Positions 3,733 through 56,378 of a stretch of DNA of 64,000 bases are shown one piece after another; position 1 is the first letter of the stretch, and each line of letters starts with the position of its first letter. The translations under genes and the position numbers were made by a program. Origin of the DNA: Leucoraja ocellata (Eukaryota); assembly GCA_036785375.1 (NCBI GenBank), contig JAWMAR010000070.1:4092001-4156000 (forward strand), read 5' to 3'. Below the pieces are notes generated by a model. That model had not been told where the DNA came from, did no database searches, and saw only the letters and a program-made list of their open reading frames with translations.

Positions 3733-3839
3733 GGCATTGTTCTGGCTATTAGCCTTATTTATCTCTGCGCAGACGCTGACTGACGCGCTAAGCACATCCA
3801 ACATGTACAGATTTCATTGCCGATATGCAACTAATTTTA

Positions 3840-7249: not shown

Positions 7250-10200
7250 ATGGATAAAACAATGTGGATTCCCCTTCTTCTCATCGCCTCGCTGCCGGGT
7301 GAGTGAAAGCCAGATCTTGATATTCCAATGATCAATGTAGGTTGGGGTCCCGTGCACCCTTTTACAGCAGAGATGGTTAAGTGTGTGTAGACATGTAATA
7401 GGGGAGATGGAACTCAGTGCATTGTGGTGACGGATCTGAAATCACATTTCAATATCTAGACTATGTTCGTAGTTTAACCACCGCTAACACTAGGTCTAAT
7501 TGCATCCTGATGATAGGCATATATAGGCATTAAATAGCGAATGTATTTGGAGCAGATACTCCAAGACACCTGGACCGAAGGACAGAGGTTCCAACATCAC
7601 CAGGAAGTTAATTCTACACTAACAAAATGTGTTTACAACAGAGGTGGAAGTCAGGATTGTGGTCTCATTGTGTCAGTTCAAATATTCCCTGCATTTGTCC
7701 ATCTCAACTCTGTCGCAAACCTAACAATTCCCCGGAGTCTGAGACTCTACCACGGTCCTCGCTCTATCCACCCACCCCCAACTCTCTCTCCATCCGCTCT
7801 CGGATCCGCGGCCCAGTCGTGCTGAAATCCAAGTTCAGTTTATTGTCACGTGTACCGAGGTACAGAGAAAAGCTTTATGTTGCATGCTAACCTGCCAGAT
7901 ACATGATTACAATCGATCATCTTACATACATGAATGGGAAATAAAGTTTAGTGTAAGGTAAGGCCAGCAAAGTCCGATCAAGGGTAGTCCGATGGTCACC
8001 AAAGAGGTAGATAGTTCAGCACTGCTCTCTGGTTATGGGAGGATGATTCCGATGTCTGCTAACAGCTGGGAAGAAACATTCCCCGAATCTGGCGGTGTGC
8101 GTTGTCACGCTACTAACGCTCTCCGTTAATGGACCCGCTCTCCGTTAATGGACCCGTAACTCGTCCGTCCTCTGTCCTCAGTCAGGGCGTTGGAAAGCAT
8201 TGGCGGCGGTGAATGTCTAAACACGGGTCGGTTTTCCGCGTCCGGGAGGGACTCGAGAAGGAGCAGGCGCTGTCCACGGGCACCTGGGGGATTTCCGGGA
8301 CATCTGGGCACCGCCTGCGGTTGAATACATCCTTGACAAGCATTGTAACATAGTTGTATAGTAGTGTATTTAGTATATTTGTTTGTCTTGTATTATGGTG
8401 CTGGGTTCTTGTTTTATTGTAGTGTAAATATTATTTTTAATAATTGAATAAATTATTTGATAATTAAAAAAAACACGGGTCCGGTCCAGTGTCGGTTGAG
8501 AGATGAATGTTGGCAGCGCAGCCGGCGGCACCGCCAATAAAACAGCAAAGTGGGGTATTTCTGTGGGGTGAGAGGCCGGGCACCGCCTGGGATTGTTGAA
8601 AGGCAGCTCCTGCAACACTGCCGCGCTCCCTCAGTACCGCACTGCGATCCCAGCCCAGTTTCTGCTCAGGGATCTGGAGTGGGAAGTGAACCCAAATTGT
8701 ACTGAACCGGGGACAGAACACTGACACAACTGGTACAATAACATCACTGCCTGCACTTCAGACCGGAGACATTGGCCGTGAAGCAATATGACACATCATG
8801 GAACGATTTAAGTTTTCTTTCAGATAATAATAATAATAACAATAATAATAATATTAATATTAATAATAATAATGCATTTTATTTGCTGGCGCCTCTCTGG
8901 ACACCCAAGGACACCTTACAGGACATAAAATCACAATACAATTATCAATATTAAAATTAAGTTGCCAAAAAACAAAAAAAAAAAAAATACACAAAATATT
9001 TTAAGTCATTAAAATCAGGGTGAACATGGTGGAAGTTATGTCGGGTATGCTAATCTAAACAGGTGTGTTTTGAGTTGTGACTTGAATTGATCGATAGTGT
9101 CTAGGTGACGGAAGGGAGGTGGGAGAGTGTTCCAGAGACGTGGGGCAGAGCAGCCAAAGGCTCTGGCAACCATTGTGCTGAGTCTAAATGTGGGGACAGT
9201 TAAAGTTACAGCTGAGGAGGAACGAAGTGGCCGGGAAGGAGTGTATGGTGGCAGCAGGTCAGAGAGGTATTGGGGAGCAAGGTGGTCTAGGGCTTTGAAG
9301 GTCAGCAGTAAATTCTTGTAGTTAATCCGGTGGTGCACAGGGAGCCAGTGGAGCTGAGTGAGGATGGGTGTGATGTGGTCCGATGATCTGGTGCGGGTGA
9401 TGATCCGGGCTGCTGAGTTCTGAATGCATTGGAGGCGATGAAGTAGTTTATATGAAGAAGTAATCTTCAAAATGTATCTATTTCCATTAAACAGTTCATT
9501 GCTCTCCATCTGAAAGTTTCTCCCCTCAGTTTCAGGTGCACTGTGGGCAAAGCGGGATGTAAGAGGAGTTGTGGGAACAGCGACCACAATCGATTGTTAC
9601 TATGCAGCAGAGTACCGCTCACACACAAAATACTGGTGCCGTGGGATGAGTCTTCAATGTACAGTTTTGGTGGAAACAAATGAGCAACACGGACGTAGTG
9701 GAAGATTGTCAATCACAGATAACCCGGCACGAGGAATATTTACTGTGACTGTGGACGATCTTCAGGATGGAGATACAGGATGGTACAGATGTGGAATTAC
9801 AACATCTGCCGACCATCCAATATTTAATGTTCATCTCGAAGTATCTGACGGTACGTTTCGCAGCGATTGATTGACGTCTCCAGCAGAAAGACAATACAGG
9901 ATTACAATCGATTCTCATACAGTGCATAGATACATGGAAATTAAATAACGTTTAGTGTAAGGTAAAGGCAGCAAAGTCCGATCAAGGGTGGTCCGAGGGT
10001 CGTCAAAGAGGTAGATGGGAGTTCAGGACAGATCTCTGGGCGTGGTAGGATGATTCAGATGCCTGATAACTGCTGTGAAGAAATTGTCACCGCCAATGAA
10101 ATAGCAAAGTGGGGTCTTTCGTGGGGTGAGAGGCCAGGCACCGCCTGGGATTGTTGAAAGGCAGCTCCTGCAACACTGCCGCGCTCCCTCAGCACTGCAC

Positions 10201-13200
10201 TGCGATCCCAGCCCAGTTTCTGCTCAGGGATCTGGAGTGGGAAGTGAACCCTAATTGTACTGACCCGGGGACAGAACACTGACACAACTGGTACAATAAC
10301 AGCACTGCCTGCACTTCAGACCGGAGACATTGGCCGTGAAGCAATATGACACATCATGGAACTATTTAAGTTTTCTTTCATGTAATCTTCAAAATGTATC
10401 TATTTCCACTAAACTGTTCATTTGCTCTCCATCTGAAAGTTTCTCCCCTTCAGTTTCAGGTGCAGTGTGGGGAGAGATGTATGTAAGAGGAGTTGTGGGA
10501 AGTGCGATTGCAATCGATTGTCACTATGCAGCAGAGTACCGCTTACACACAAAATACTGGTGCCGTGTGCAGAATCGCCAATGTACAGATATGGTGGAAA
10601 CAATTGGGCTACGCGGAAGGAGTGGAAGAGTGTCAATCACCGATAGCCCGGAACGAGGAATATTTACTGTGACTGTGGAGGATCTTCTCTCTGGCGATAC
10701 AGGCTGGTACAGATGTGGAATTACAACATCTAACGGCCTCCCAATGTTTACCGTAGAACTCCTTGTATCTGACGGTACGTTTCGCAGCGATTGACTTGTC
10801 GTCTCCACTGACTCGCCACTTCCCGCCATTCAGAAAAGGACCCGTTCACTCCTACTCTTTGCTTCCTGTCTGCCAACCAATTTCCTATCCACGTCAACAC
10901 CCTTCCATGCGCTCTCAATTTAGTCACCAGTCTCCCGTGCGGAACCTTATCAAAGGATTTCTTGAAGTCTAGACGACATTCACTGGCTCACCTTCGTCCA
11001 TTTTATTTGCCACATCCTCAAAAAATTCCCGAAGATTAGTCAGGCATGATTTTCCTTTCATAAATCCATGCTGACTTGGACTAATTATTTTACTGCTATT
11101 CAAATACCCCATTATTACCTCTTTAATAATTGACTCCGGCACCTTTCCCGCACCGAAGTCAGGCTAACTGGTCTGTAATTTCCCGTTTTCTCTCTTGCTC
11201 CTTTCTTGAAAAGTGGCATTTAACTTCACTTTTCACTTCAAGTGGAATACTCAGCGCATTGCCCTTCCTCTGAACTGTATGAAATGTCACCCGTCAGAAA
11301 TTTGCATTCAGACTCAAACTAATAATCCCAGTGAGGAACAAGTGTTGTTTGATCTGTGGTCCATCTGAAAGTTTCTCCCCTCAGTTTCAGATGCAGTGTG
11401 GGCAGAGAGGGAAGTAAGAGGGGTTGTGGGAAGAGCGATCACAATCGATTGTCACTATGCAGCAGAGTACCGCTCACGCACAAAATACTGGTGCCGTGGG
11501 AGGAATCGCCCATGTACAGATTCAGTGGAAACAAATGGCCAAAACGGACGGAGTGGAAGAGTGTCAATCACAGATATACCGGCACTAAGAATATTTGCTG
11601 TGACTGTGGAGGATCTTCACTCTGGAGATACAGGACGGTACAGATGTGGAATTACTACACCTGGCGACCGTCCAATATTTACCGTACATCTCCAAGTATC
11701 TGACGGTACGTTTCGCAGCGATTGACTTGACGTCTCCACTGAAATGCCTTATCTATGTTCTCTCCGGGAAGGGTCAGGGCAGCACCGATATCCCGAGGCT
11801 CCGCAGCAGTGCAGAGACCTGCGGGGAACGGGCGGGGGTCGGGAAACCCCACTCATGTTGCTCTCACCCAGTGCGGGCTCTGTTCCACTGAGCGGCCACC
11901 CACTTCAAGTGGGATGCTCAACACATTTCCCTGCCTCTGAACTGTATGAAATGTCACCCTGTCAGAGGTTTGCATTCCGACTCAAACTAATAACCCGACA
12001 GACTCCGCAACTCACTGGTCAACTCGTCCTTTCCCACCCCGTCCCCAGATACCTTCCCCTACAACTGCAGGAGATGCAACACCAGTCCCTATATATCCCG
12101 CTTCTACTCCGTCCAAGGTTCCAACAGTATTTCCGGGTGAGTCAGAGGTTCATTTGCATCTCTTCTAACCTCCTCTACTATTTCCGCTGTTCCAGGTGTG
12201 AACAAGCGGATACAGTAGATGGGAGACCCAACGCAGGCTCGGCGATCGTTTCGCTGAACAATTCCGCACAGTGTTCCTCGGCCTACGCTACATCCCGATT
12301 GCAAAACACCTTTATTCACCCTCCCATTCCCAAACTGATCTTTCTGTCCCGGACCTCCTCCCCTGCAGAGTGAGGCCAAAAGCAAATTGGAGGAACAGTA
12401 CCTCATATTTCGCTTGGGCAGCTTACAACCCAGCGGTTTGAATATTGACTTCTCTAACTTCAAGTAACCCTTGCTTTACTCCTGTCTCCATCCCGCCCCA
12501 TCCGAAGCCTCCAATTATTTTCACTGCCCTCCAGATTATATTTTACTGATTCTATGCCTTCCCTTCAGCTGACAATGATCCATTCTACATTTTTTAAAAC
12601 ATTTTCACCTTTGATCACTTGTTTTCACACCGTACCCTTCCATTTCTCTTCTGTCTCCCTTTCTCATGGTTCTCAGGCTGAAGAAGGGTCACGATTCGAA
12701 ACGTCACCCATTCCTTCTCTCGAAAGATGCTGCCTCATCCGCCGAGTTACTCCTGCATTTTGTGTCTATCTTAAAGGGACGTAACATCCCAACATATGTT
12801 CTGAGGGGCAACATTTTCCACACATTGGGTGATATTTATATGGAACCTGCTGCCAGGGGGAAGGTGTTAAGGCAGTTAGAATAGCAGCATTTAAAATATT
12901 TTTTTGATATTTGCGTAGATTGGGATCATTGCGAGTGATAAGGGAGAAACGTGGACATATGGAAATGGTCCAGAAAGACATGTTGGTCGGCATGAATGAG
13001 CTGTTGTGATGGGCATCTTTCGGTTCTCTATAACTCTAACCTTCTTCAGTTTCTGGGCTTCGCACACTCACAGAGATGTAGATGAGCCGGTGAGATGTCA
13101 ACCGGACGGTTCGGGCTGAGATAAAGGGCTGCTGAGATTTAGCACGTGTTTGGTTTTTAACTGTTCATACAGGTGACTGAATGTTTGCTCCATTCCCACA

Positions 13201-16200
13201 GAACCCATGTCTGCTCCTGTGCTCAGATATCTGTCACCAGCAAATGCCTCACATCTCGGAGGCTCAGTGTCAGTGTCGTGTGAGTCTGTCCGTGGATCCC
13301 TTCCCATCCATTACACATGGTTTGAAAAGAACGAGCATTGGGTTTCAACGATCGTGTCTGACAATCAACTGGATCTGAGTTGTGAAATCCTCGAAGGTCA
13401 ACACCGTCAATATTACTGCACAGCCTCAAATAATCGTGGGACAAAATCCAGTGAAATACTCAACGTGAAAGTCTTCAAAGGAGCAGGAACGTGCAGTTAT
13501 GTGACAGAAATCAACAATGCAGGTGAGTGTTCTTCTCGTGTCCCTGAACCTGCTGCTATTCGCTTTGAGGTGATGTTCATGGATTTCTTGTTATTTGCAG
13601 ACGGCATCATTGCAGCCACCGGGAGCTCATGGTGTAAAATGCGAGAGTTTGTTTGGGGGACTGGTAAATGATTGCCTGTTGCTTTCACCTGGGCGGTGGT
13701 GAGAAATTTCAGCAAATGAGAGAAATACCTGCGGGTTCAGTGCATTCCATCAAAATTATTTTCTGGCTGCCGCACTTTGAGACAGAGAAATAAACCAAAT
13801 TCATTCTGTTTGGATCCATCATCAGTTATAACCAAGGATGCACAATTTTATGATCATGTTCATGATTTTAACTCTGTTAATTTGTGTTAAACTCCAGTAA
13901 TCTCACAAAATTAAATTGGAATCTACTTGGCCGTCACTCCATCAAGTATAACCCTTACTTTTGTCAAAGATAATTTTGAAAAGAACTTCCCTGTAGGTGT
14001 GGAGACGCTCAGATTGGAAGTCCAGAAGAGGGTGTGAATGGTTTACATCAGCGAGACCAATTTTATACAAGGCCAGTTCTTCTTAAACTATTACAGTGTC
14101 ATTCGCCCTTGAGTCTTTATTACAAAATTTAATTCACCCTCCACAAAATGTTCTTATGTTCTTTTGGTTATTATCATCGTATTTTCCTTTGTGCATAATT
14201 TTATAGATAATTGATTTTATCACATGAGCAAAAAACGTAAATTAAGTAATTTACCCCAAAATAATTATATTCGCCCTTGGGTGAACCATTCATCAGTTTA
14301 AGAAGCACTGGCCTAGGCTACAATTTCGCCGAACACTTGTGTTTGGTTTGTCATGACCCAGAGTCGCGCTTGATAGACACCCCATCCTCAACCTCCCCCG
14401 CTGATGCAGAGCAGCAGCAGTTTACACCATCTGCACGATGCACTGCAGCAACTCACCAAGACTCCCTAGACAGCGCCTTCCAATTGCAACAGGCTCCATG
14501 TTCAGTGCATCATTCTTCACCATTCACACCCACATTGGCTGGGAAGCGCTTTGGAACGACCTGTGCAGATGGTGAGGGACGGTGTACAGTATCTGTCTCT
14601 CATCGCAATCTAGGTGGAATTCAACACAGTTAAGAAAATGATTGGGCGGACTCCCCTGTACACATTGATGTATACTCTAATGTATATGTTCGTGAAAGGA
14701 TAATTTTGCTCTTCAATTTATGAAAGATTGTTCCTTCAGTTTCAGGTGCACTGTGGGCAGAGAGCGAAGTGCGAGGGGTTGTGGGAAGAGCGATCACAAT
14801 CGATTGTCACTATGCAGCAGTGTACCGCTCACACACAAAATACTGGTGCTCTGGGACAAGTCGCCAGTGTACACATGTAGGTGAAACAAATGGGAAACAT
14901 GGACGGAGCCGAAGAGTGTCAATCACAGATAACCCGGCACGAGGAATATTTACTGTGACTGTGGAGGATCTTCACTCTGGAGATACAGGCTGGTACAGAT
15001 GTGGAATTACTGCACCTGGCGAACCAACATTTAAAGTACATCTCCAAGTATATGAAGGTAGGTTTCTCAGTGAGTGACTTGATGTCCACTTTGGCAACGG
15101 GCAAAATATTTGTTACGTGGGAGTCTGGTGCACAGTTCTGGTCGCCGCTTTATAAAACAAAAGATGTGAACGGTTTGTAGAGTTTACAGAAAAATGTACA
15201 CCCGGATATACAAATGTAACATGGAAACGGATCCTTCGGCCCATCGAGTCCTCACCACCTAGTGATCACCGGTCACACTAGTTCTATGTTATTCCACTTT
15301 CCCATTCGCTCCCTACACACTATTCTACAATACCGCAAATCACACACCTCATTAGTACAACAGTATCACTATCAACAATTTTATGCAAGGAAATTAAAAA
15401 GTTGTTGATACTGTTGCACTAATGAAGTGTTTGAAAGTTCAGCTTAAAAGCACAGTTTCAGATTAAAAGAAGATTAACTGCAGATGCTGGAATTGTAAAA
15501 CAAAGAGAGATGGTGCAGCTGTGTACTGGTACAGTGGCAGACATGGTAGTTCTGGCGGCTGGGAGGATGGAGAGACACAGAGATGTCTAAATCTGGTAAG
15601 TGGATTGTGAGGAGAAGGAGCAGAGAAGATTTACAAGGATGTTGCGATGACTTGAGGGCCTGGTATGCAGGGAGGGGTTGAGCAGATTAGGGCTTTATTC
15701 CTTGGAACGCAGGAGGATGAGGGGTGATTTTATTGCAGGTAAACAAATCCTGCGAGTTTAAAATAAAATTGGACCCCAACACAGAATTGATTATTTTTGG
15801 AACAATGGAAGCCGGGTCTAAGGTGATTTCGTTCCAAAATTCTCTCCTTAACCATGGCTTGATAACAGCAAAAAAAAACGTATACTCAAATTCTGGAAGA
15901 ACGAACCCACCCCCACGCTTAAAATGTGGATTTCAAGCATGTCTGAAATGTTACACCTCGAAGATATGAGATTCGGCCTTGCAGGTAAAGCAGACCAATT
16001 CCTAAAGATTTGGTCTCATTTTATCGACTTATTCCAAGTACATGGTGCAACATAACCCTGGAAATTAACTGTTTCAGAACTGGGTGAGGGGTGTGGAAAG
16101 ACATGAAGCAGGTATATCCCTTCTCCCTTTTATTCTTTTTCTGTTTTGTTTCCTTATTATTTTATTTTATTTTCTATTTTTTATTTCTATTTACTAATTT

Positions 16201-19200
16201 ATGTATTTATTTTTCGGGGGGGAGTTCACGTTTTTTTTGCGGCTTTATATCTTTACGGGTTCTTTCTATCTATTCTTTCACGAACTATCAATATCACTAC
16301 TTAACTTTCTCTCTCCTTCTCTTTTTGTTTCTGTTACTTTTCTATTAATAAATTAAAAACAAGAAGTTTTACACTAAATGTAATATGTAAAACACGGTTT
16401 ATACTACTGTACATTGATTCAAATAAAAATATTTATTAAATTTTTTTTTTAAATCACAAAAATCACGCGAGGAATAGATCGAGTAAATACACAGTCTTTT
16501 GCCCAGAGTAGGGGAATAGGGAACCAGAGGACATAGTTTTCATATCAGGCGGGAATGATTTAACAGGAACCTGGCGAGTAACGTGTTTACACAAAGGTTG
16601 GTAGGTCCATGAAACGAAATGCTGAAGGAAGTAGTTATGGCTGGTACTAACGTAACATTTCAGAAAATATTGGACAGTTACATGAATAGGATATGTTTAG
16701 AGGGTTGAGGGCCAAGAAAGGACAGGTGGAACTAGTGTACATTGGGCGTGTTGGTCAGCGCGGGCAAGTTAGGCCGAGGTTTCTACTGTATGACTCTACG
16801 AATCTATGTAGATGGGATGGGTCCGACAGTTATATAAACAATGCTCCCTTTTTCCTGCTGGCAATTCCTGAAATGTAAAAGAGAATCGAAGATTGTCTGA
16901 TGATATGTCCGCTCTGTGGTCAGTATTCATCACCATGTTATAGGAAAGATGCTATCAAGTAAGATTGGGTGCAGAAAAGATTTACAATGATGCTGCCATG
17001 ACTTGAGTGCCTGAACTCCAGGGAGGGATTGAGCGGACTAGGACTTTATTTCTGGGAGAGCAGGAGGATGAGGGATGATCTTACGGCAGCTACAAAATCA
17101 CGCGACGAATAGATCGAGTAAATGCACAGTCTCTTCCGTTTGGAAGCTTATGGGCTAAGCAAGGGCAGGTGGAACTAGTGTGGATGGACATGTTGGCCTG
17201 CTTCTACACTATATGCCTCTATGACTCTAAGTAGATGGATGGGTCAGATTCCAACCTGGCGGCTCTGGCGAAGATACAGAGATGGTGGATATTGGCGAGT
17301 GTTTGATTTTCAGATGTTCACTCAGTGTCTGACTGTTTTCTCCTTTCCCACAGAACCCGTGTCTGTTCCTGTGCTTGGGTGTCTGTCACCAGCCAATGTC
17401 TCTTGTCTCGGGGGCTCAGTGACAGTGTCCTGTGAGTCGGTCCGGGGATCCCTTCCCATTAACTACAGCTGGTATGAAAAGACCCCATCTGGGGATTCAA
17501 AGATCTCAGACAACAATGCCCTGGATCTACATTGTCAATCCTTCAAACACCAGCACCATCAATATTATTGCACAGTCTCAAATCAACATGGATCAAAATC
17601 CAGTGAAATGGTCAACGTGTCCATCTCCAGCAGTGACGTGTCCTGCAGTTTCCTGGTGAAAATCAACGGCACTGGTAAGTAGTGGAGGGAATGGGGAGAA
17701 GAAGGGGAAGTGGGGGTGGGGTTGTTCATAAGATCACATGTGATAGAAGCAGAAATAGACCATTCAATCATGGCTGATGTATCTTCCCCTCCTCACCCCA
17801 TTCTCCTGCCTTTTCCCCATAACCCCCGACACCCTGAAATCCATGCACGTTATTTAATTACGTTATCAAGATTAAAATGATGGAATTATGGCCCATTTGT
17901 CAATACTTGGTTGCTGGGCTCCAGAAATAGATTTCCCAGCGCTGGTGTAGACCAGCTTCCCGGCTAGAACTGCCTCTTATGTTTACACAGCTTTAAACTA
18001 GGTTTGCAGTGACATCAGTCCAAGCATTTTCACTTTCCATCATCTTCACATGACCGACACTCAAATATGTGAAGGGATCAGAAATTATCAGTAAATGTGG
18101 CCACAGTTAACTCCTAGACGACGGTATCGCATTTGGGTCACTGTGTTAATGTTGTCCATTCAGTACTATCAATACTCATCCCACTTACCAGCACCTCATC
18201 CATTGAGGCAATTCAGGTACCTCTATCTTCTCGGTTTAAAAATATTTATTTATACCCTTCAAACATCCTGCTCCTTAACTTACCCATATGTTCTCCACTT
18301 TTACACATATCTGTCATGTAAAATGTTCCAAAAATACCCTGTCTATGCTGCTCATAGTTTTGTACACCTGTAATAGCCCCCCCCCCCCCTTCCTCACCTG
18401 TTCTGCATGGAATTTTATAAAACCCCTATCCAACCCCTCCCCATCACTGTAATGTTTCATCCCAAGCAATACTCCTCTCAAATGAAATTGGACCCTTTTG
18501 ATTAATTTGTGGATACATCGTGGAAGCAGGTTCTTCGTCCCACTGAGTACACAACGTCCAGTAATCACCAGTATACTAGTTCCATGGGGAAAATTTACAG
18601 AAGCCAATTAACCAACACACTTGCAAGAGTTCAGACTGTGGGGAAACTGGAGCATTTGTAGAAACCCCACGCGGTCACAGGGAGGAGGTACAAATTCCGT
18701 GCAGACAGCATCCGTGGTCAGGATCGAACCCGTGCCTCTGGCTGTAAGGCAGCAACTCTACCGCTGCGCCACCGTGCCATCTACACCTGGAGCCAGAGTT
18801 GTTACCAGCACTCCTGCTTGTCATGATAACATCTCCCATTTGCTGCAAATCACACAGAAGAAGCATTACCCTGTCTGTTAAGCCTATCAACTCCATTCAT
18901 CGGAAAACCATAGCTACTTGTTAAACTGCAAGTGAAAAGCAGTGAAACTGACTTGTATTTCCTTGTTCCAACAGGTCTTGAATATTATTGTGAAAATTCG
19001 ATACCATCCAATTACTCTGCAAGGTAAAATGCTCTGTTTCCAATGAAAGTTACAATGTACTAATTGCTGGTGTTTTGATTGGGGAATGCTTTAATTGGGA
19101 GAAAGTTGTGCCTTCCTTTCACTGGCATTAAATGCGTGAGAGTGTTGAGCCACAGTCTCACAACGCCACGACATTGGTTCATTAGGAGACCACTGTCTGT

Positions 19201-26908: not shown

Positions 26909-26980
<72 letters not shown>

Positions 26981-41900: not shown

Positions 41901-42897
41901 GTAGCCATGCCCCAACAATGACGTCAACAATTGGTGATCATATGTTGTCCCCCCCCCCCCGCCTCCCCCCAGTCCAACTCCCGTTCTTTTCCAAAGATGG
42001 TCTCCACTGACGCTGCCGCTTCGCCGCGCTCCACTTCACCAAGATTATGAAGCAAATAACAGGTAAATGCTTCAAAGATTAACCGTCTCGTTTCCTCCCA
42101 TTGACTCCGTATTTCTTGCCCTTTGCCCAGTTATATCTCATGGGAAGTGGGGCGCTGGATGTTTTTTCTCCTGCTTGTGATCTGGAGTATCTCAACCGCG
42201 GTGTTCACAAGAGGCTCTAAGGTAGGTTTTATTGTCATCATGTTCATAAATTATAGGAGCAGAATTAGGCCATTCAGCCCATCATATCTAATCGGCCCCC
42301 AATCACGTCTGATCTATCCTTCTCTCTCGATCCCATTCACCTGCCTTCTCCCCGTAACCATTGACATCCTTATTTATCAAGAAAATGAAAATCTCCGCCT
42401 TAAAAATATCAATTAATTTGGACAGATACGAAAATGCTGGAGTAGCTCAGCGGATCTGGCAGCATCTCCGGTGTGAATTAACTTGGCCTTCACAGCCTCC
42501 TGTGGCAATGAAATCCATAGATTCACCAGAAGGGATTCGCCCAAAGCAATCCCTTCTCTTCGCCGAATGTTTCCAAACGGTTTCCATTAATGCTTTCATA
42601 TATCCTGTCCATCAATAGAAACAATAATCGTGCATGTTTTCATATCCTGAGGTTAAACCAAATCTCTATGTAGATGATATTACGAGTTTCTGTCACGTTG
42701 TACGCGTGCAGGGTGGGTTTCTTTGTCCGGTGTGGGTTCGTTTGCATTGGATTAACTAATTCGTGGGTTAGCATCTTGCAGACAGCAATGTGTTGGGAGT
42801 GGTCGGGTCAAATAAAGCGTGGTTCCCACTGTCCGTCTGTCTGATGACTTCACATTGTCTTTTGCAGAGACGCGATGACTCAGAACCTCGCCACTAG
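25333..42897 (+). CDS. Gene B: CD300/pIgR-like (MDIR-type) receptor, L-V-V-V-C2-V-C2-V-C2-stalk-TM-tail, ~948 aa if all major exons are used
   Basis: Leader 25333-25381. V1 27636-27956, V2 28557-28877, V3 29492-29812, C2a 31309-31629, mini-exon 31708-31770, V4 32841-33158, C2b 35485-35805, V4' 36378-36695, C2b' 39002-39322. Stalk 40450-40498 and 41997-42062, TM 42131-42221, tail 42868-42897 (RRDDSEPRH*). All boundaries are canonical and in frame. Confidence 0.88.
26911..26979. repeat. (AAT)23 microsatellite, the L2 tail; also 47554-47622, and an interrupted copy at ~8824-8873
   Basis: Directly visible; it accounts for the poly-N and poly-Y ORFs in the track. Confidence 0.97.
32718..39765 (+). 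repeat. Internal ~3.5 kb tandem duplication of the V4-C2b module in gene B
   Basis: 32718-36258 and 36255-39765 are colinear copies. The junction aactcCTAGgtggaattc fuses post-C2b intron sequence to pre-V4 intron sequence. Confidence 0.95.
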
Positions 42898-45800: not shown

Positions 45801-45995
45801 ACCCAACCATTGCTAGATATACCCCTGAGCCTTTCACACTACATCGTGTCGAGCTGCTGCTGGCTCGCTGTGGTTCACGATCTTACTTCCTGTTCCCTTC
45901 TAAGTCATTGCTATTTGAGAGACGCGGTGGTCTCTGAGAGCTCAGAGCTGAGCGACGGACAGAAAAGTGCTGGCCTTGTCACTGTGGATAAAATA

Positions 45996-47551
45996 ATGTG
46001 GATTCCCATTCTTCTCATCTCCTCGCTGCCGGGTGAGTGAAAGCCAGATCCTGATATTCCAATGATCAATGTTAGTTGGGGTCCCGTGCACCCTTTCCAC
46101 AGCAGAGATGGTTAAGTGTGTGTAGACATGTAATGGGCGAGATGGAACTCAGTGCATTGTGGTGATGGATCTGAAATCACATTTGAATATCTAGACAATG
46201 TTCGTAGTTTAACCACCGCTAACACGTGGTCTAATTGCATCCTGATGGTAGTTTATAGGCATAAAATAACGAATGTATTTGGAGCAGATATTCCAAGACA
46301 CCTGGACCGAAGGACAGAGGTTCCAGCATCACCAGGAAGTTAATTCTACACTAACAAAATGTGTTTACAACAGAGGTGGAAGTCACGATTGTGGACGCAT
46401 TGTGTCAGTTCAAATATTCCCTGCATTTGTCCATCTCAACTCTGTCGCAAACCCAACAATTCCCCGGAGTCTGAGACTGAACCACTGTCCTCGCTCTATC
46501 CACCCACTCCCAACACTCTCTCCATCCGCTCTCGGATCCGCGGCCCAGTCGTGCTGAAATTCAAGTTCAGTTTATTGTCACGTGTACAGAGTTACAGAGA
46601 AAAGCATTTTGTTGCGTGCTAACCTGCCGGATACATGATTACAATCGATCCTCTTACAGCGCATAGATACATGAATGGGAAATAACGTTTAGTGTAAGGT
46701 AAGGCCAGCAAAGTCCGATCAAGGGTAGTCCTAGGGTCCCCAAAGAGGTAGATAGTTCAGCACTGCTCTGGTTATGGGAGGATGATTCCGATGTCCGATA
46801 ACAGCTGGGAAGAAACATTCGTCGAATCTGGCGGTGTGCGTTGTCACGCCACTAACGCTCTCCGTTAATGGACCCGCTTTATTGTATCTCGTCCGTCCTC
46901 TGTCCATAGTCAGGGCGTTGGAAAGCATTGGCGGCGGTGAATGTCTAAACACGGGTCGGCTTTCCGCGTCCGGGTGGGACTCGAGAAGCACCAGGCGCTG
47001 TCCACGGGCACCTGGGGGATTTCCGGCACATCTGGGCACCGCCTGTGGTTGAATACACCCTTGACAAGTATTGTAACATAGTTGTATAGTAGTTTATGTA
47101 GTATATTTGTTTGTCTTGTATTATGGTGCTGGGTTCTCGTTTTATTGTAGTGTAAATATTATTTTTAATAATTGAATAAATAATTTGATAATTAAAAAAA
47201 ACACGGGTCCGGCCCAGTGTCGGTTGAGAGATGAATGTTGGCAGCGTAGCCGGCGGCACCGTCAATTAAATAGCAAAGTGGGGTCTTTCTGTGGGGTGAG
47301 ATGCCGGGCACCGCCTGGGATTGTTGAAAGGCAGCTCCTGCAACACTACCGCGCTCCCTCAGTACCGCACTGCGATCCCAGCCCAGTTTCTGCTCAGGGA
47401 TCTGGAGTGGGAAGTGAACCCTAATTGTACTGACCCGGGAACAGAACACTGACACAACTGGTACAATAACAGCACTGCCTGCAATTCAGACCGGAGACAT
47501 TGGCCGTGAAGCAATATGACACATCATGGAACGATTTAAGTTTTCTTTCAT

Positions 47552-47622
<71 letters not shown>

Positions 47623-50600
47623 TATTATTATATTAATAATAATAATGCATTTTATTTGCTGGCGCCTCTCTGGACACCCAAGGACACCTTACAGGACATA
47701 AAATCACAACACAATTATCAATATTAAAATTAAGTTGCCAAAAAACAAAAAACAAAAAAATACACAAAATATTTTAAGTAATTAAAATCAGGGTGAACAT
47801 GGTGGAAGTTATGTCGGGTATGCTAATCTAAACAGGTGTGTTTTGAGTTGTGATTTGAATTGATCGATAGTGTCCAGGTGACGGAAGGGAGGTGGGAGAG
47901 TGTTCCAGAGACGTGGGGCAGAGCAGCCAAAGGCTCTGGCAACCATTGTGCTGAGTCTAAATGTGGGGACAGTTAAAATTGCAGCTGAGGAGGAACGAAG
48001 TGACCGGGAAGGAGTGTATGGTGGCAGCAGGTCAGAGAGGTATTGGGGAGCAAGGTGCGGTAGGGCTTTGAAGGTCAGCAGTAAAATCTTGTAGTTAATC
48101 CGGTGGTGCACAGGGAGCCAGTGGAGCTGAGTGAGGATGGGTGTGATGTGGTCCGATGATCTGGTGCGGGTGATGATCCGGGCTGCAGAGTTCTGAATGC
48201 ATTGGAGGCGATGAAGTCGTTTATATGACGAAGTAATCTTCAAAATGTATCTATTTCCATTAAACAGTTCATTGCTCTCCATCTGAAAGTTTCTCCCCTC
48301 AGTTTCAGGTGCAGTGTGGGCAAAGTGGGATGTAAGAGGAGTTGTGGGAACAGCGACCACAATCGATTGTTACTATGCAGCAGAGTACCGCTCACACACA
48401 AAATACTGGTGCCGTGGGATGAGTCTCCAATGTACAGTTTTGGTGGAAACAAATGAGCAACACGGACGGAGTGGAAGAGTGTCAATCACAGATAACCCGG
48501 CACGAGGAATATTTACTGTGACTGTGGACGATCTTCAGGATGGAGATACAGGATGGTACAGATGTGGAATTACAACATCTGCCGACCATCCAATATTTAA
48601 CGTTCATCTCGGAGTATCTGACGGTACGTTTCGCAGCGATTGATTGACGTCTCCAGCAGAAAGACAATACAGGATTACAATCGATTATCCTACAGTGCAT
48701 AGATACATGAAAAATAAATCACGTTTAGTGTAAGGTAAAGGCAGCAAAGTCCGATCAAGGGTGGTCCGAGGGTCGTCAAAGAGGTAGATGGGAGTTCAGG
48801 ACAGATCTCTGGGCGTGGTAGGATGATTCAGATGCCTGATAACTGCTGTGAAGAAATTGTCACCGCCAATGAAATAGCAAAGTGGGGTCTTTCTGTGGGG
48901 TGAGAGGCCGGGCACCGCCTGGGATTGTTGAAAGGCAGCTCCTGCAACACTGCCGCGCTCCCTCAGTACCGCACTGCGATCCCAGCCCAGTTTCTGCTCA
49001 GGGATCTGGAGTGGGAAGTGAACCCTAATTGTACTGACCCGGGGACAGAACACTGACACAATGGTACAATAACAGCACTGCCTGCACTTCAGGCAGGAGA
49101 CATTGGCCGTGAAGCAATATGACACATCATGGAACTATTTAAGTTTTCTTTCATGGAATCTTGAAAAGGTATCTATTTCCACTAAACTGTTCATTTGCTC
49201 TCCTTCTGAAAGTTTCTCCCCTTCAGTTTCAGGTGCAGTGTGGGGAGAACCGTATGTAAGAGCAGTTGTAGGAAGTGCGTTTACAATCGATTGTCACTAT
49301 GCAGCAGAGTACCGCTCACACACAAAATACTGGTGCCGTGTGCAGAATCGCCAATGTACAGATATGGTGGAAACAATTGGGCAACACGGAAGGAGAGGCA
49401 GAGTGTCAATCACAGATAACCGGGTACGAGGAATATTTACTGTGACTGTGGAGGATCTTCTCTCTGGCGATACAGGCTGGTACAGATGTGGAATTACAAC
49501 ATCTAACGGCCTCCCAATGTTTACCGTAGAACTCCATGTATCTGACGGTACGTTTCGCAGCGATTGACTTGTCGTCTCCACTGACTCGCCACTTCCCGCC
49601 ATTCTGAAAAGGACCCGTTCACTCCTACTCTTTGCTTCCTGTCTGCCAACCAATTTCCTATCCACGTCAACACCCTTCCATGCGCTCTCAATTTAGTCAC
49701 CAGTCTCCCGTGCGGAACCTTATCAAAGGATTTCTTGAAGTCTAGATACACTACATTTACTGGCGCACCTTCGTCCATTTTACTTGCCACATCCTCAAAA
49801 ATGTCCAGAAGATTATTCAGGCATGATTTTCCTTTCATAATTCCATGCTGACTTGGACTAATTATTTTACTGCTATTCAAATACCCCATTATTACCTCTT
49901 TAATAATTGACTCCGGCACCTTTCCCGCACCGAAGTCAGGCTAACTGGTCTGTAATTTCCCGTTTTCTCTCTTGCTCCTTTCTTGAAAAGTGGCATTTAA
50001 CTTCACTTTTCACTTCAAGTGGAATACTCAGCGCATTGCCCTTCCTCTGAACTGTATGAAATGTCACCCGTCAGAAATTTGCATTCAGACTCAAACTAAT
50101 AATCCCAGTGAGGAACAAGTGTTGTTTGATCTGTGGTCCATCTGAAAGTTTCTCCCCTCAGTTTCAGATGCAGTGTGGGCAGAGAGGGAAGTAAGAGGGG
50201 TTGTGGGAAGAGCGATCACAATCGATTGTCACTATGCAGCAGAGTACCGCTCACGCACAAAATACTGGTGCCGTGGGAGGAATCGCCCATGTACAGATTC
50301 AGTGGAAACAAATGGCCAAAACGGACGGAGTGGAAGAGTGTCAATCACAGATATACCGGCACTAAGAATATTTGCTGTGACTGTGGAGGATCTTCACTCT
50401 GGAGATACAGGATGGTACAGATGTGGAATTACTACACCTGGCGACCGTCCAATATTTAACGTACATCTCCAAGTATCTGACGGTACGTTTCGCAGCGATT
50501 GACTTGACGTCTCCACTGAAATGCCTTATCTATGTTCTCTCCGGGAAGGGTCAGGGCAGCACCGATATCCCGAGGCTCCGCAGCAGTGCAGAGACCTGCG

Positions 50601-53600
50601 GGGAACGGGCGGGGGTCGGGAAACCCCACTCATGTTGCTCTCACCCAGTGCGGGCTCTGTTCCACTGAGCGGCCACCCACTTCAAGTGGGATGCTCAACA
50701 CATTTCCCTGCCTCTGAACTGTATGAAATGTCACCCTGTCAGAGGTTTGCATTCCGACTCAAACTAATAACCCGACAGACTCCGCAACTCACTGGTCAAC
50801 TCGTCCTTTCCCACCCCGTCCCCAGATACCTTCCCCTACAACTGCAGGAGATGCAACACCAGTCCCTATATATCCCGCTTCTACTCCGTCCAAGGTTCCA
50901 ACAGTATTTCCGGGTGAGTCAGAGGTTCATTTGCATCTCTTCTAACCTCCTCTACTATATCCGTTGTTCCAGGTGTGAACAAGCGGATACAGTAGATGGG
51001 AGACCCAACGCAGGCTCGGCGATCGTTTCGCTGAACAATTCCGCACAGTGTTCCTCGGCCTACGCTACATCCCGATTGCAAAACACCTTTATTCCCCCTC
51101 CCATTCCCAAACTGATCTTTCTGTCCCGGACCTCCTCCCCTGCAGAGTGAGGCCAAAAGCAAATTGGAGGAACAGTACCTCATATTTCGCTTGGGCAGCT
51201 TACAACCCAGCGGTTTGAATATTGACTTCTCTAACTTCAAGTAACCCTTGCTTTACTCCTGTCTCCATCCCGCCCCATCCGAAGCCTCCAATTATTTTCA
51301 CTGCCCTCCAGATTATATTTTACTGATTCTATGCCTTCCCTTCAGCTGACAATGATCCATTCTACATTTTTTAAAACATTTTCACCTTTGATCACTTGTT
51401 TTCACACCGTACCCTTCCATTTCTCTTCTGTCTCCCTTTCTCATGGTTCTCAGGCTGAAGAAGGGTCACGATTCGAAACGTCACCTACGTCTTCTCTCGA
51501 AAGATGCTGCCTAATCCGCCGAGTTACTCCTGCATTTTGTGTCTATCTTAAAGGGACGTAACATCCCAACATATGTTCTGAGGGACAACATTTTCCACAC
51601 ATTGGGTGATATTTATATGGAACCTGCTGCCAGGGGGAAGGTGTTAAGGCAGTTAGAATAGCAGCATTTAAAATATTTTTTTGATATTTGCGTAGATTGG
51701 GATCATTGCGAGTGATAAGGGAGAAACGTGGACATATGGAAATGGTCCAGAAAGACATGTTGGTCGGCATGAATGAGCTGTTGTGATGGGCATCTTTCGG
51801 TTCTCTATAACTCTAACCTTCTTCAGTTTCTGAGCTTCGCACACTCACAGAGATGTAGATGAGCCGGTGAGATGTCAACCGGACGGTTCGGGCTGAGATA
51901 AAGGGCTGCTGAGATTTAGCACGTGTTTGGTTTTTAACTGTTCATCCAGGTGACTGAATGTTTGCTCCATTCCCACAGAACCCGTGTCTGCTCCTGTGCT
52001 CAGATATCTGTCACCAGCAAATGCCTCACATCTCGGAGGCTCAGTGTCAGTGTCGTGTGAGTCTGTCCGTGGATCCCTTCCCATCCATTACACATGGTTT
52101 GAAAAGAACGAGCATTGGGTTTCAACGATCGTCTCTGGCAATCAACTGGATCTGAGTTGTGAAATCCTCGAAGGTCAACACCGTCAATATTACTGCACAG
52201 CCTCAAATAATCGTGGGACAAAATCCAGTGAAATACTCAACGTGAAAGTCTTCAAAGGAGCAGGAACGTGCAGTTATGTGACAGAAATCAACAATGCAGG
52301 TGTGTGTTCTTCTCGTGTCCCTGAACCTGCTGCTATTCACCTTGTGATGATGTTCATGGATTTCTTGTTATTTGCAGACGGCATCATTGCAGCCACCGGG
52401 AGCTCATGGTGTAAAATGCGAGAGTTTGTTTGGGGGACTGGTAAATGATTGCCTGTTGCTTTCACCTGGGCGGTGGTGAGAAAGTTCAGCAAATGAGAGA
52501 AATACCTGCGGGTTGAGTGCATTCCATCAAAATTATTTTCTGGCTGCCGCACTTTGAGACAGAGAAAGAAACCAAATTCATTCTGTTTGGATCCATCATC
52601 AGTTATAACCAAGGATGTACAATTTCATGATCATGTTCATGATTTTAACTCTGTTAATTTGTGTTAAACTCCAGTAATCTCACAAAATTAAATTTGAATC
52701 TACTTGGCCGTCACTCCATCAAGTATAACCCTTACTTTTGTCAAAGATAATTTTGAAAAGAACTTCCCTGTAGGCGTGGAGACGCTCAGATTGGAAGTCC
52801 AGAAGAGGGTGTGAATGGTTTACATCAGCGAGACCAATTTTATACAAGGCCAGTTCTTCTTAAACTATTACAGTGTCATTCACTCTTGAGTATTTATTAC
52901 AAGATTTAATTCACCCTCCACTAAATGTTCTTATGTTCTTTTGGTTATTATCATCGTATTTTCCCTTGTGCATAATTTTATAGATAATTGATTTTGTCAC
53001 ATGAGAAAAAAACATAAATTAACTAATTTACCCCAAAATAATTTTATTCGCCCTTGGGTGAACCATTCATCAGTTTAAGAAGCACTGGCCTAGGCTACAA
53101 TTTCGTCGAACACTTGTGTTTGGTTTGTCATGATCTAGTGTCGCGCATGATAGACACCCCATCCTCAACCTCGCCCGCTGATACAGAGCAGCAGCAGTTT
53201 GCACCATCTGCACGATGCACTGCAGCAACTGACCAAGACTCCCTAGACAGCGCCTTCCAATTGCAACAGGCTCCATCTTCAATACATCATTCTTCACCAT
53301 TCACACCCACATTGGCTGGGAAGCGCTTTGGAACGACCTGTGCAGATGGTGAGGGACAGTGTACAGTATCTGTCTCTCATCGCAATCTAGGTGGAATTCA
53401 ACAGAGTTAAGAATTTGAGTGGGCAGACTCCCCTGTACATTATACTCTAATGTATATGTTTGTGAAAGGCTAATTTTGCTCTTCAATTTATGAAAGATTT
53501 TTCCTTCAGTTTCAGGTGCACTGTGGGCAGAGAGCGAAGTGCGAGGGGTTGTGGGAAGAGCGATCACAATCGATTGTCACTATGCAGCAGTGTACCGCTC

Positions 53601-55328
53601 ACACACAAAATACTGGTGTCGTGAGACAAGTCGCCAGTGTACACGTATAGTGGAAACAAATGGGAAACATGGACAGAACGGAACAGTGTCAATCACAGAT
53701 AACCCGGCACGAGGAATATTTACTGTGACTGTGGAGGATCTTCACTCTGGAGATACAGGATGGTACAGATGTGGAATTACTACACCTGGCGAACCAACAT
53801 TTAAAGTACATCTCCAAGTATCTGAAGGTAGGTTTCTCAGTGAGTGACTTGATGTCTCCACCTTGGCAACGGGCAAAATATTTGTTAGGTGGGAGTCTGG
53901 TGCACAGTTCTGGTCGCCGCTTTATAAAACAAAAGATGTGAAAGGTTTGTAGAGTTTACAGAAACGTGTTCACCCGGATATTTAGTAATAGTTTACAAAT
54001 GTAACATTGAAACTGATCCTTCGGCCCACCGAGTTCACACCGACTAGCGATCACCGGTCACACTAGTTCTATGTTATTCCACTTCCCCATTCACTCCCTG
54101 CACACAATTCTACAATACCGCCATTCACACACCTCATTAGTGCAACAGTATCACTATCAACTATTTTATGCAAGGAAATTAAAAAGTTGTTGATAGTGAT
54201 ACTGTTGCACTAATGAAGTGTTTGAATGTTGATATTGTAGAATTGTGGCAGAGGTTTAGATTAAAACATATTAACGGCAGATGCTGGAATTGTAAAACAA
54301 AGAGAGATGGTGCTGCTGTGTCCTGGCACAGTGGCAGACATGGTAGTTCTGGCAGCTGGGAAGATGGAGAGGCACAGAGATAATTAAATCTGGTAAATTG
54401 TGTGGAGAATGAGCAGGGAAGACTTACAATGATGCTGCGATGACTTGAGGGCCTGGCATACAGGGAGGGGTTGAGCAGATTGGGGCTTTATTTCTTGGAG
54501 CGCAGCAGGATGTGGGTTGATCTGAATGCAGGTAAAACATTATGCGAGGAATAGATCGAGTAAATACACAGAGTCTTTTACTCAGAGTAGGGGAATCCAG
54601 AACCGGAGGACATATGTTTAATATGAGGGGGGAATGATTTAACAAGAACCTAGGGAGTAATGTTTTTACATAAAGGTTGGTAGGTACATGACATGAACTG
54701 CCGACAGAAGTAGTTTCGGCAGGTACTATCGTAACATTTAAGAAAATATTCGACAGTTATATGAATATGATATGTTTAGAGGATTAAGGGCCAAGAAAGA
54801 GCAGGTGGAACTAGTGCAGATTGGGCGTGTTGGTCAGCGCGGGCAAGTTAGACCGAAGGGCCTGTTTCTATGCTGCATGACTCTATGACTCTATGTAGAT
54901 GGATGGGTTAGATTCCAACTTGGCGTCTGGCTAAGATACAGAGATGGCGGATATTGGCGATTTTCAGATGTTCACTCAGTGTCTGACTGTTTGCTCTTTT
55001 CCCACAGAACCCGTGTCTGCTCCTGTGCTTGGATTTCTGTCACCAGCCGATGTCTCCTGTTTCGGGGGCTCAGTGACCGTGTCCTGTGAGTCGGTCCGGG
55101 GATCCCTTCCCATTAACTACAGCTGGTATGAACAGACCCCATCTGGGGATTCAAAGATCTCAGACAACAATGCCCTGGATCTACATTGTCAATCCTTCAA
55201 ACACCAGCACCATCAATATTCTTGCACAGCCTCAAATAATAATGGATCCAAATCCAGTGAAATGGTCAACGTGTCCATCTCCAGCAGTGACGTGCCCTGT
55301 AGTTTCCTAGTGAAAATCAACGGCACTG
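45996..55328 (+). CDS. Gene C (3' partial): CD300/pIgR-like (MDIR-type) receptor, L-V-V-V-C2-V-C2, with stalk/TM exons missing at the gap
   Basis: Leader 45996-46032 (MWIPILLISSLP; the upstream ATG of A/B is GTG here). V1 48303-48623, V2 49227-49547, V3 50162-50482, C2a 51979-52299, mini-exon 52378-52440, V4 53510-53827, C2b 55008-55328. All are open with canonical splice sites. Confidence 0.85.
54123..54227. repeat. Intronic inverted repeat, 39 bp arms with a 27 nt loop (MITE-like); shorter-armed copies at ~15338-15436, ~33453-33551 and ~36990-37088
   Basis: attcacacacctcattagtgcaacagtatcactatcaac pairs with gttgatagtgatactgttgcactaatgaagtgtttgaat with 2 mismatches. Confidence 0.85.
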
Positions 55329-56178: not shown

Positions 56179-56378
56179 NNNNNNNNNNNNNNNNNNNNNN
56201 NNNNNNNNNNNNNNNNNNNNNNNNNNNNNNNNNNNNNNNNNNNNNNNNNNNNNNNNNNNNNNNNNNNNNNNNNNNNNNNNNNNNNNNNNNNNNNNNNNNN
56301 NNNNNNNNNNNNNNNNNNNNNNNNNNNNNNNNNNNNNNNNNNNNNNNNNNNNNNNNNNNNNNNNNNNNNNNNNNNNNN
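56179..56378. other. Assembly gap (200 N)
   Basis: Run of N; the round length suggests a scaffold join of unknown true size. Confidence 0.99.

What the first reader, a model, noticed from the sequence alone, without database searches (positions are those of the whole stretch)
7250..55328. Every V exon looks like a first domain: a possible combinatorial exon-cassette immune receptor locus
Seen: all 13 V exons open with the same residues, (V)SG/DA(L/V)W, which complete the signal peptide begun by the single leader exon (MWIPLLLIASLP-VSGA). All 13 V and 7 C2 exons are phase 1-1 and 318 or 321 nt long. Each gene has only one leader and, where visible, one TM set. Known: CD300/pIgR-like D1 exons normally carry the end of the signal peptide, and skate MDIRs are described as having modular domain combinations. 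Inference: the leader can splice in frame to any V exon and any subset of Ig exons can be skipped. One gene could then yield many V/C2 combinations, a Dscam-like diversification without DNA rearrangement. The alternative is one unusually long V3-C2-(V-C2)n chain.
Basis: partly seen in the sequence, partly recalled or inferred. Interest (0 to 1): 0.85.

Follow-up and report, generated by a model that had tools for sequence, protein, structure and literature searches.

The report
Tandem skate MDIR immune-receptor genes
Three tandem copies of a known skate immune-receptor gene family (MDIR), each most likely making one long chain of Ig domains, with no evidence so far for a Dscam-like splicing lottery.

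Summary
The window holds three tandem gene copies, 95-96% identical. Each has one leader exon. Together they carry 13 V and 7 C2 exons, all open, all AG...GT, all phase 1-1, 318 or 321 nt. All 13 V exons open with VS(G/D)A(L/V)W.

These genes belong to a known family, the skate modular domain immune-type receptors (MDIR), which RefSeq calls pIgR-like or CMRF35-like. Cloned clearnose-skate cDNAs MDIR3 (leader-V-V-C2-V-C2-TM) and MDIR5 (leader-V-C2-V-C2-TM) keep the same VSGA(L/V)W start inside the mature chain.

The shared start is family-wide in sharks, rays and skates. LWAE... aligns to mature pIgR D1. The V-S codons overlap a second in-phase AG that ray RefSeq isoforms use alternatively.

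Some Ig-exon skipping is modelled in ray relatives. No leader-to-internal-V join of the kind proposed, no docking/selector RNA signal and no exon-subset cDNAs were found.

RNA reads laid on this locus were nearly silent, so splicing here remains untested. Other notes of this scan report similar receptor clusters elsewhere in this genome.

Verdict: a new member of a known kind. The combinatorial reading is unproven and unlikely.

The parts
7250..7298 (+). Gene A leader exon (MDKTMWIPLLLIASLP + 1 nt; donor CGG|gtgagt, phase 1)
9530..9850 (+). Gene A V1 exon, 321 nt, phase 1-1
10454..10774 (+). Gene A V2 exon, 321 nt
11385..11705 (+). Gene A V3 exon, 321 nt (starts VSDAVW)
13202..13522 (+). Gene A C2a exon, 321 nt
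14740..15057 (+). Gene A V4 exon, 318 nt (skate internal-only V4-type clade)
17354..17674 (+). Gene A C2b exon, 321 nt
18975..19023 (+). Gene A stalk exon, 49 nt (GLEYYCENSIPSNYSA), enters in phase 1 and leaves in phase 2
20669..20759 (+). Gene A TM exon, 91 nt (YISWEVGRWMFFLLLVIWSISTAVFTRGSK), 90% identical to the MDIR5 TM
21406..21453 (+). Gene A tail exon (RRDDTEPRHSTHQLQ*)
25333..25381 (+). Gene B leader exon
27636..27956 (+). Gene B V1 exon
28557..28877 (+). Gene B V2 exon
29492..29812 (+). Gene B V3 exon
31309..31629 (+). Gene B C2a exon
32841..33158 (+). Gene B V4 exon
35485..35805 (+). Gene B C2b exon
36378..36695 (+). Gene B V5 exon (part of the extra V-C2 cassette; 32718-36246 is duplicated as 36255-39766)
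39002..39322 (+). Gene B C2c exon
40450..40498 (+). Gene B stalk exon
42131..42221 (+). Gene B TM exon
42868..42897 (+). Gene B tail exon, ended early by a TAG (RRDDSEPRH*)
45984..46032 (+). Gene C leader exon (the first ATG is GTG here; the MWIP... Met at 45996 remains)
48303..48623 (+). Gene C V1 exon
49227..49547 (+). Gene C V2 exon
50162..50482 (+). Gene C V3 exon
51979..52299 (+). Gene C C2a exon
53510..53827 (+). Gene C V4 exon
55008..55328 (+). Gene C C2b exon; no stalk, TM or tail exon found downstream before the N run at 56179-56378

Best explanation
The region is three tandem paralogues, in 18-21 kb units, of the skate MDIR family. These are receptors built from CD300/pIgR-like V domains and C2 domains. 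Each gene reads leader - V1 - V2 - V3 - C2a - V4 - C2b (plus V5 - C2c in copy B) - 49-nt stalk exon - TM exon with charged residues (WEVGRW) - short tail. The main product is most likely the full chain with all Ig exons, i.e. an MDIR5-type membrane anchor on an MDIR3-like but longer ectodomain (inferred from relatives, not shown for this locus). Three things explain why every V exon looks like a first domain. (1) L-W-A-E... is the start of the V-domain body. (2) The V-S codons (GTTTCAG) double as the pyrimidine tract and AG of a second in-phase acceptor, which is alternatively used. (3) Each exon plus about 35 nt of flank is kept alike, by selection and/or exon-level homogenisation, with first and internal V exons repeatedly exchanged during family evolution. 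Minor alternative forms are expected: with or without VS, occasional cassette skipping, and stalk skipping that frame-shifts the TM exon into a short secreted tail. That is ordinary Ig-superfamily splicing, not a diversification system.
For: Family: V exons match pIgR (7jg2_E, E 2.8e-48) and CD300 structures. Window exons match cDNA-derived MDIR3 (P0166) and MDIR5 (P0186) at 85-88% for V4 and C2b and 90% for the TM exon. RefSeq names the relatives pIgR-like or CMRF35-like. Long chain is real: the MDIR3 cDNA protein reads L-V-V-C2-V-C2-TM-ITIM tail, with internal starts VSGAVW and VSGALW; MDIR5 reads L-V-C2-V-C2-stalk-TM. Modularity is germline: MDIR2, MDIR3 and MDIR5 domains are 62-89% identical and none is identical, and copies A/C and B differ by a DNA-level V-C2 duplication. 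The motif is family-wide: the consensus V-S-G-A-L-W-A-E holds in 147 first and 446 internal V domains of 223 proteins, and 28 of 30 internal V domains in 19 chosen proteins start [VIL]S[GDA][AG][LV]W. LWAESEV aligns to residues 4-10 of mature pIgR D1. Second AG: all 13 V exons read ...cag|TTTCAG|G, and three ray isoform pairs differ only by VS at an internal V start. Exon maintenance: identity between V types is 0.7-0.97 across the exon and about 35 nt of flank, then random at 0.2-0.4. First/internal exchange: at least 10 label changes on the V-domain tree. All 20 Ig exons are intact.
Against: No transcript evidence for this locus. In 4 RNA runs the Ig exons had depth of 1.35 or less, and none of the 15 listed joints lay at an exon boundary; 22 further joints were not shown. 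The tissues of the runs are unknown. Old internal-only V clades (skates, 12 rows, support 100/99; rays and sawfish, 7 rows, 99/95) still keep SGALWAE, so recent copying alone does not explain the motif. Ray RefSeq isoforms do model leader-to-C2, C2 skipping and an alternative leader+V joined to a downstream V. V1-V3 donors are the weakest Ig-exon donors in the gene, at 6 of 9 matches to the consensus. I could not read Cannon et al. 2006; it or its supplements may report splice variants.
Confidence: 0.7

Rival explanations
1. Combinatorial exon-cassette use. The single leader splices to any V exon, and subsets of V/C2 exons are skipped. One gene then yields many receptor forms, and the conserved VSGA start of internal V exons is kept so that each can complete the signal peptide.
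For: All Ig exons are phase 1-1 with near-identical acceptors, and every V exon begins with small residues compatible with signal peptidase. The motif is retained in old internal-only V clades. Ray RefSeq isoforms include leader joined directly to C2 (P0244 against P0245 and P0201), an alternative leader+V joined to a downstream V (P0225 against P0218) and one skipped C2 (P0001 against P0154). V1-V3 donors are relatively weak.
Against: cDNAs MDIR3 and MDIR5 contain several V domains at once. Of 22 V4-type domains, 0 follow a leader. No docking/selector complementarity was found (z between -1.4 and +1.6) and there is no reverse-complement copy of the shared upstream element. The N-terminal codons are no more conserved than framework codons. 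Different MDIR domain combinations come from different genes. Phase 1-1 is generic for Ig exons (established knowledge). There are no exon-exon joints in the reads laid, though depth was too low to count as a real test.
Confidence: 0.1
2. Only some of the Ig exons are normally used. V2 and/or V3 are mostly skipped or are decaying extra copies, and the usual product is an MDIR5-like V-C2-V-C2 receptor.
For: MDIR5 cDNA is V-C2-V-C2 with this same TM type. The little-skate RefSeq model P0152 ends in V1 joined directly to C2a-V4-C2b, with exons 90-98% identical to this window. V1-V3 donors match the consensus at only 6 of 9 positions. The clean V2 bin had depth of 0.11 or less, against up to 1.3 for V1 and V3 (numbers far too small to weigh).
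Against: All 9 V1-V3 exons are open with intact splice sites in three copies that are 4-5% diverged. MDIR3 cDNA and three Amblyraja RefSeq models (P0164, P0165, P0167) contain two consecutive V domains, and some ray models contain three (P0218). P0152 is a merged model of a paralogue or allele, whose gene may simply lack these exons.
Confidence: 0.15

Closest known systems
Modular domain immune-type receptors MDIR3 and MDIR5 of the clearnose skate (cDNA-derived proteins P0166 and P0186; Cannon et al. 2006, which I could not read, so its content is recalled only)
   Same: Same leader (MDKTMWIP...), same V and C2 domain subtypes in the same order, and the same VSGA(L/V)W start of internal V domains. 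The TM exon is 90% identical to MDIR5. Per-domain identity reaches 85-88%.
   Different: The window genes have three consecutive N-terminal V exons (MDIR3 has two, MDIR5 one), and copy B has a further V-C2 pair. They combine an MDIR3-like ectodomain with the MDIR5-type TM and tail rather than an ITIM tail.
Polymeric immunoglobulin receptor (pIgR)
   Same: It is the best solved-structure match. A single V exon aligns to all five pIgR domains, and the chain consists of several V-type domains in series.
   Different: C2 domains are interleaved. The tail is 15 residues after a TM with charged residues, not a long sorting tail. The genes form a multigene tandem cluster. They are not pIgR orthologues.
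CD300 / CMRF35-like molecules
   Same: Same V-domain type (E about 1e-18 to CLM-1 structures). Paired inhibitory and activating-type tails occur across the family.
   Different: CD300 receptors have a single V domain (recalled); these genes encode 6-8 Ig domains.
Dscam1-type mutually exclusive exon arrays (recalled)
   Same: Arrays of similar Ig-coding exons in one gene.
   Different: Here cDNAs of relatives include several array members together. No docking/selector pairing was found. The exons are whole symmetric domains, not alternative halves of one domain.

Membership tests
MDIR (skate modular domain immune-type receptors) | Sequence kinship to the cloned MDIR cDNA proteins | tested here: met
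   tblastn of P0166 and P0186 on the window gives V4 86-88%, C2b 85%, TM exon 90% and leader 88-94%. The window V domains nest within skate clades that include MDIR3 and MDIR5.
MDIR (skate modular domain immune-type receptors) | Ectodomain built from a few Ig-domain subfamilies in varying number and order | tested here: met
   V-set and Ig_2/Ig_3 exons. The order is V-V-V-C2-V-C2, with a further V-C2 in copy B. Relatives show VCVC, VCV, VCVCVC, VVCVC and other orders by an approximate regex census.
MDIR (skate modular domain immune-type receptors) | Large multigene family with inhibitory (ITIM) and charged-TM or short-tail forms | tested here: met
   Three copies plus the 3' end of a fourth lie in this window. 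The TM reads WEVGRW... with a 15-residue tail. ITIM-type tails occur in MDIR3 and in RefSeq relatives. Signalling itself cannot be tested here.
pIgR (orthologue) | Chain of V-type domains only, with a long cytoplasmic sorting tail (recalled definition) | tested here: not met
   C2 exons are interleaved, and the tail exon encodes 15 residues.
Dscam-like mutually exclusive / combinatorial exon array | Transcripts carry one member, or a variable subset, of the exon array | tested here: inconclusive
   No usable RNA coverage at this locus. cDNAs of relatives carry 2-3 V domains together. Ray RefSeq isoforms show a few skipping events.
Dscam-like mutually exclusive / combinatorial exon array | Docking-site / selector-sequence RNA pairing upstream of each variable exon | tested here: not met
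   RNAduplex of the first 700 nt of the leader intron against 60 nt upstream of V1-V4 gives z between -1.4 and +1.6 relative to 100 mononucleotide shuffles. There are no reverse-complement hits to the shared 27-nt element at up to 6 mismatches. This was a limited test.

The most novel reading that the evidence does not exclude
Every Ig exon is symmetric phase 1 with a near-identical double acceptor, and every V exon opens with a peptidase-compatible VSGA. A single MDIR gene might therefore produce a repertoire of leader-V(n) starts and cassette-skipped ectodomains. The retention of VSGA in old internal-only V clades of batoids would then reflect selection for that ability. This would be a splicing-based way to diversify innate receptors in cartilaginous fish.
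Probability: 0.1. Interest if true: 0.8.

Novelty: new member of a known kind. Interest (0 to 1): 0.3.

Why it matters
If the combinatorial reading were true, it would be a vertebrate counterpart to insect Dscam diversification, in the oldest jawed-vertebrate lineage. The evidence instead points to an ordinary tandem cluster of MDIR genes, in which domain variety is written in the germline by exon and gene duplication. Three by-products are useful. The first is a complete exon map of three copies. The second is a double acceptor that explains the conserved V-S codons and the isoforms with and without VS. The third is a warning: RefSeq models in these arrays often merge neighbouring genes, because every V exon accepts any upstream Ig exon in frame.

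Tried and rejected
RNA test. I laid 4 RNA runs from 3 studies on 7250-13249. Almost all reads sat on intronic repeats, exon depth was 1.35 or less, and no listed joint lay at an exon boundary.

Transcript fragments in the protein collection. The V2 exon used alone as query gave 1 hit among 3 candidates and no fragments.

The alignment A2 was not used further.

Hydropathy scan for TM exons. It missed the real TM exon, which tblastn with relatives found later.

Regex for EYSC stalk and KRDES tail. It found nothing; a local alignment then found both exons.

pN/pS between copies. Values of 0.6-1.2 do not discriminate between the readings.

The idea that internal V exons are just recent copies of V1. 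I rejected it, because the introns are unalignable beyond about 35-80 nt and old internal-only clades exist.

P0152 as evidence for skipping of V2 and V3 at this locus. I rejected it, because the exons are 90-98% identical, not identical.

Literature. Only PMC3031540 mentions MDIRs; I read passages of it. Cannon 2006 (PMC3701310) and Cannon 2010 (PMC2823954) are not held. No supplements were opened.

A joined, spliced protein model of the window genes was never built, searched or folded. Exons were handled one at a time, and SignalP-type scoring of leader+V joins was left out for that reason.
Full report
WHAT IS THERE

The window has one N run, at 56179-56378. Self-comparison shows three tandem units that are 95-96% identical. 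The middle unit carries an extra internal duplication: 32718-36246 recurs as 36255-39766 at 94.9% identity.

tblastn with one V ORF and one C2 ORF from the window finds 13 V and 7 C2 hits. The motif PSVS[GD]A[LV]W occurs 13 of 13 times, and PTEP[VM]S[AV]PVL 7 of 7 times. All 20 exons are open and have AG...GT. Nine V exons are 321 nt, four V exons are 318 nt, and all seven C2 exons are 321 nt. All are phase 1-1. Pfam gives V-set for the 4 V exons tested and Ig_2/Ig_3 for the 2 C2 exons tested.

There are three leader exons, each ending in phase 1 before gtgagt.

One refinement applies. Each V exon has two in-phase AGs 6 nt apart (...cag|TTTCAG|G). The V-S residues exist only if the upstream AG is used.

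COMPLETING THE GENES

A hydropathy scan missed the membrane anchor. tblastn with related proteins then found a TM exon (YISWEVGRWMFFLLLVIWSISTAVFTRGSK) at 20669-20759 in gene A and 42131-42221 in gene B. A third copy at 1999-2089 belongs to a gene that starts upstream of the window.

Local alignment with stalk and tail peptides of relatives found two further exons:
- a 49-nt stalk exon (GLEYYCENSIPSNYSA) at 18975-19023 and 40450-40498;
- a tail exon at 21406-21453 and 42868-42897.

The stalk exon shifts the phase from 1 to 2. Without it, the TM exon reads V(I/T)SHGKWGAGC..CL*.

Gene C has no visible 3' exons before the N run.

WHAT FAMILY

A full HMMER scan with one V exon gave 2435 proteins at E of 0.001 or better. 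Many of them have 2-12 V matches.

The closest are RefSeq models named pIgR-like, CMRF35-like or Fc receptor-like, from skates (Leucoraja, Amblyraja, Rhinoraja), rays, sawfish and sharks. Three are cDNA-derived clearnose-skate proteins labelled Modular domain immune-type receptor 2, 3 and 5.

The architectures are:
- MDIR3 (P0166): leader-V-V-C2-V-C2-stalk/TM-ITIM tail;
- MDIR5 (P0186): leader-V-C2-V-C2-stalk-TM.

The MDIR5 TM is 90% identical to the window's TM exon. The best solved structures are pIgR (E 2.8e-48) and CD300/CLM-1.

The window genes are therefore MDIR family members with an MDIR5-type anchor and a longer MDIR3-like ectodomain. The source is a skate close to, or the same as, Leucoraja erinacea. 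The evidence is exon identities of 90-98% to a little-skate model, and a window V4 that is sister to a Leucoraja domain. The species is not established.

IS THE LONG CHAIN REAL?

Yes, in a sister genus. In the MDIR3 cDNA protein the internal V domains begin ...KVSD-VSGAVWAK and ...IYNA-VSGALWAE. In MDIR5 the internal V begins ...MNNT-VSGALWAE. The first-domain-like start therefore sits inside the mature chain.

The three MDIR cDNA proteins that I could see are not exon subsets of one gene. Their corresponding domains are 62-89% identical and none is identical. MDIR1 and MDIR4 were not seen.

Copies A/C and B of the window differ by a DNA-level V-C2 duplication. The modularity that can be checked is germline.

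WHY DOES EVERY V EXON LOOK LIKE A FIRST DOMAIN?

(a) The pattern is family-wide.
- In 223 retrieved proteins, 147 first and 446 internal V domains share the consensus V-S-G-A-L-W-A-E. Frequencies at V/S/G/A/L/W are 0.47/0.59/0.41/0.57/0.54/0.45 for first domains and 0.30/0.43/0.35/0.39/0.50/0.39 for internal domains. Domains were classified by regex, and the rows are not independent.
- In 19 chosen proteins, 28 of 30 internal V domains start [VIL]S[GDA][AG][LV]W.

(b) LWAESEV aligns to residues 4-10 of mature pIgR D1. At most V-S-G-A can be signal-peptide remainder. By the usual V-domain layout, this stretch lies where strand A lies (established knowledge; not tested, because folding was closed).

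(c) GTTTCAG, which encodes V-S, is also the tract and AG of the second acceptor. Three ray isoform pairs differ only by VS at an internal V start: P0218/P0226, P0176/P0238 and P0242/P0187.

(d) Between the four V types, nucleotide identity is 0.7-0.97 across the whole exon. The first codons score 0.93, no higher than the framework. Identity continues about 35 nt into each intron and then falls to 0.2-0.4.

(e) On a tree of 62 V domains, the first/internal label changes at least 10 times. Shark and chimaera first and internal domains of one protein are sisters. Batoids, however, have old internal-only clades: skates with 12 rows (support 100/99) and rays with 7 rows (99/95).

The motif is thus maintained, not merely recently copied. 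I cannot separate structural, splice-site and signal-peptide constraints on V-S-G-A.

IS THERE EVIDENCE FOR COMBINATORIAL SPLICING?

RNA. Four runs from 3 studies were laid on 7250-13249.
- 2495-6193 reads were laid per run, and 80-98% of them ran on into unlike sequence, which is typical of repeats.
- Bin depths by exon: leader 0-0.25; V1 0-1.32; V2 clean bin 0-0.11; V3 0-1.35; start of C2a 0-0.25.
- None of the 15 listed joints lies at an exon boundary, and 22 further joints were not shown.
- The tissues are unknown, so this is no test.

RefSeq isoform sets in rays and Rhinoraja model the following events:
- presence or absence of VS at internal V starts;
- an alternative donor inside a C2 exon (P0239/P0176);
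- leader joined directly to C2, skipping V1 (P0244 against P0245 and P0201);
- an alternative leader+V joined to a downstream V (P0225 against P0218);
- one skipped C2 (P0001 against P0154);
- TM-less forms (P0207 against P0246).

These are models in near-identical tandem arrays, and I could not inspect their support. Several RefSeq models clearly merge neighbouring genes (P0001, P0003, P0152).

Evidence against the combinatorial reading:
- 0 of 22 skate V4-type domains follow a leader; 21 follow a C2 and 1 follows a V.
- There is no docking/selector complementarity.
- Phase 1-1 symmetry is the norm for Ig-superfamily exons (established knowledge), so in-frame skipping is possible in most such genes.
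- Donors of V1-V3 (ACG|gtacgt, 6 of 9 matches to the consensus) are somewhat weaker than those of V4/V5 (7 of 9) and C2 (7-8 of 9). This would allow some skipping but does not show it.

VERDICT

The interpretation's premise is right but generic. The Dscam-like reading is not excluded, and I put it at about 0.1.

The family is known, so this is a new member of a known kind. Earlier notes of this scan describe similar V-C2 receptor clusters elsewhere in the same genome. I did not test them.

LIMITS

Cannon 2006 and its supplements could not be read. What I say about that paper beyond the sequence labels is recalled.

Noticed in passing
20669-20716, 42131-42178, 1999-2046: If the 49-nt stalk exon is skipped, the TM exon is read in another frame as V(I/T)SHGKWGAGC(S/F)F(S/Y)CL*. 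RefSeq models in Leucoraja (P0003) and Amblyraja (P0005) end exactly this way. This may be a conserved secreted isoform, or it may be a modelling artefact.
   Followed up: partly
1-3137 (stalk about 333-381, TM 1999-2089, tail about 2735-2782): The 3' end (stalk, TM and tail exons) of a fourth gene of the same family lies at the start of the window. The cluster therefore continues upstream.
   Followed up: partly
42895-42897: The gene B tail exon has TAG where copies A and the upstream gene have TCG. This shortens the cytoplasmic tail by 6 residues.
   Followed up: no
45984-45986: In gene C the first ATG of MDKTMWIP is GTG. Translation would have to start at the second Met, at 45996.
   Followed up: no
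V3 exons 11385-11705, 29492-29812, 50162-50482; C2a exons 13202-13522, 31309-31629, 51979-52299: V3 and C2a differ by only 0-4 of 318 nt between copies, whereas the other Ig exons differ by 3-24 (V1, V2, V4, C2b). This suggests local gene conversion or stronger constraint.
   Followed up: partly
7650-8049, 9850-10049, 10650-11249, 12250-12849: RNA reads pile up (depth of 10-170) on intronic interspersed repeats, mostly at 90-99% likeness and with loose ends. These are transcribed repeat families elsewhere in the genome, not this gene. Retroelement-like ORFs lie on the minus strand at 9036-9587, 27141-27656, 28851-29249, 47809-48360 and 49521-49919.
   Followed up: no
related proteins P0001, P0003, P0152, P0154: RefSeq models in skate MDIR arrays fuse neighbouring genes, for example TM exon joined to the next gene's V, or C2b joined to the next gene's V1. 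They are then named titin-like or Fc receptor-like. This is an annotation hazard caused by uniform exon phase.
   Followed up: partly
58857-64000: Earlier scan notes place a decaying GNAT2-like (cone transducin) gene here. I did not examine it.
   Followed up: no
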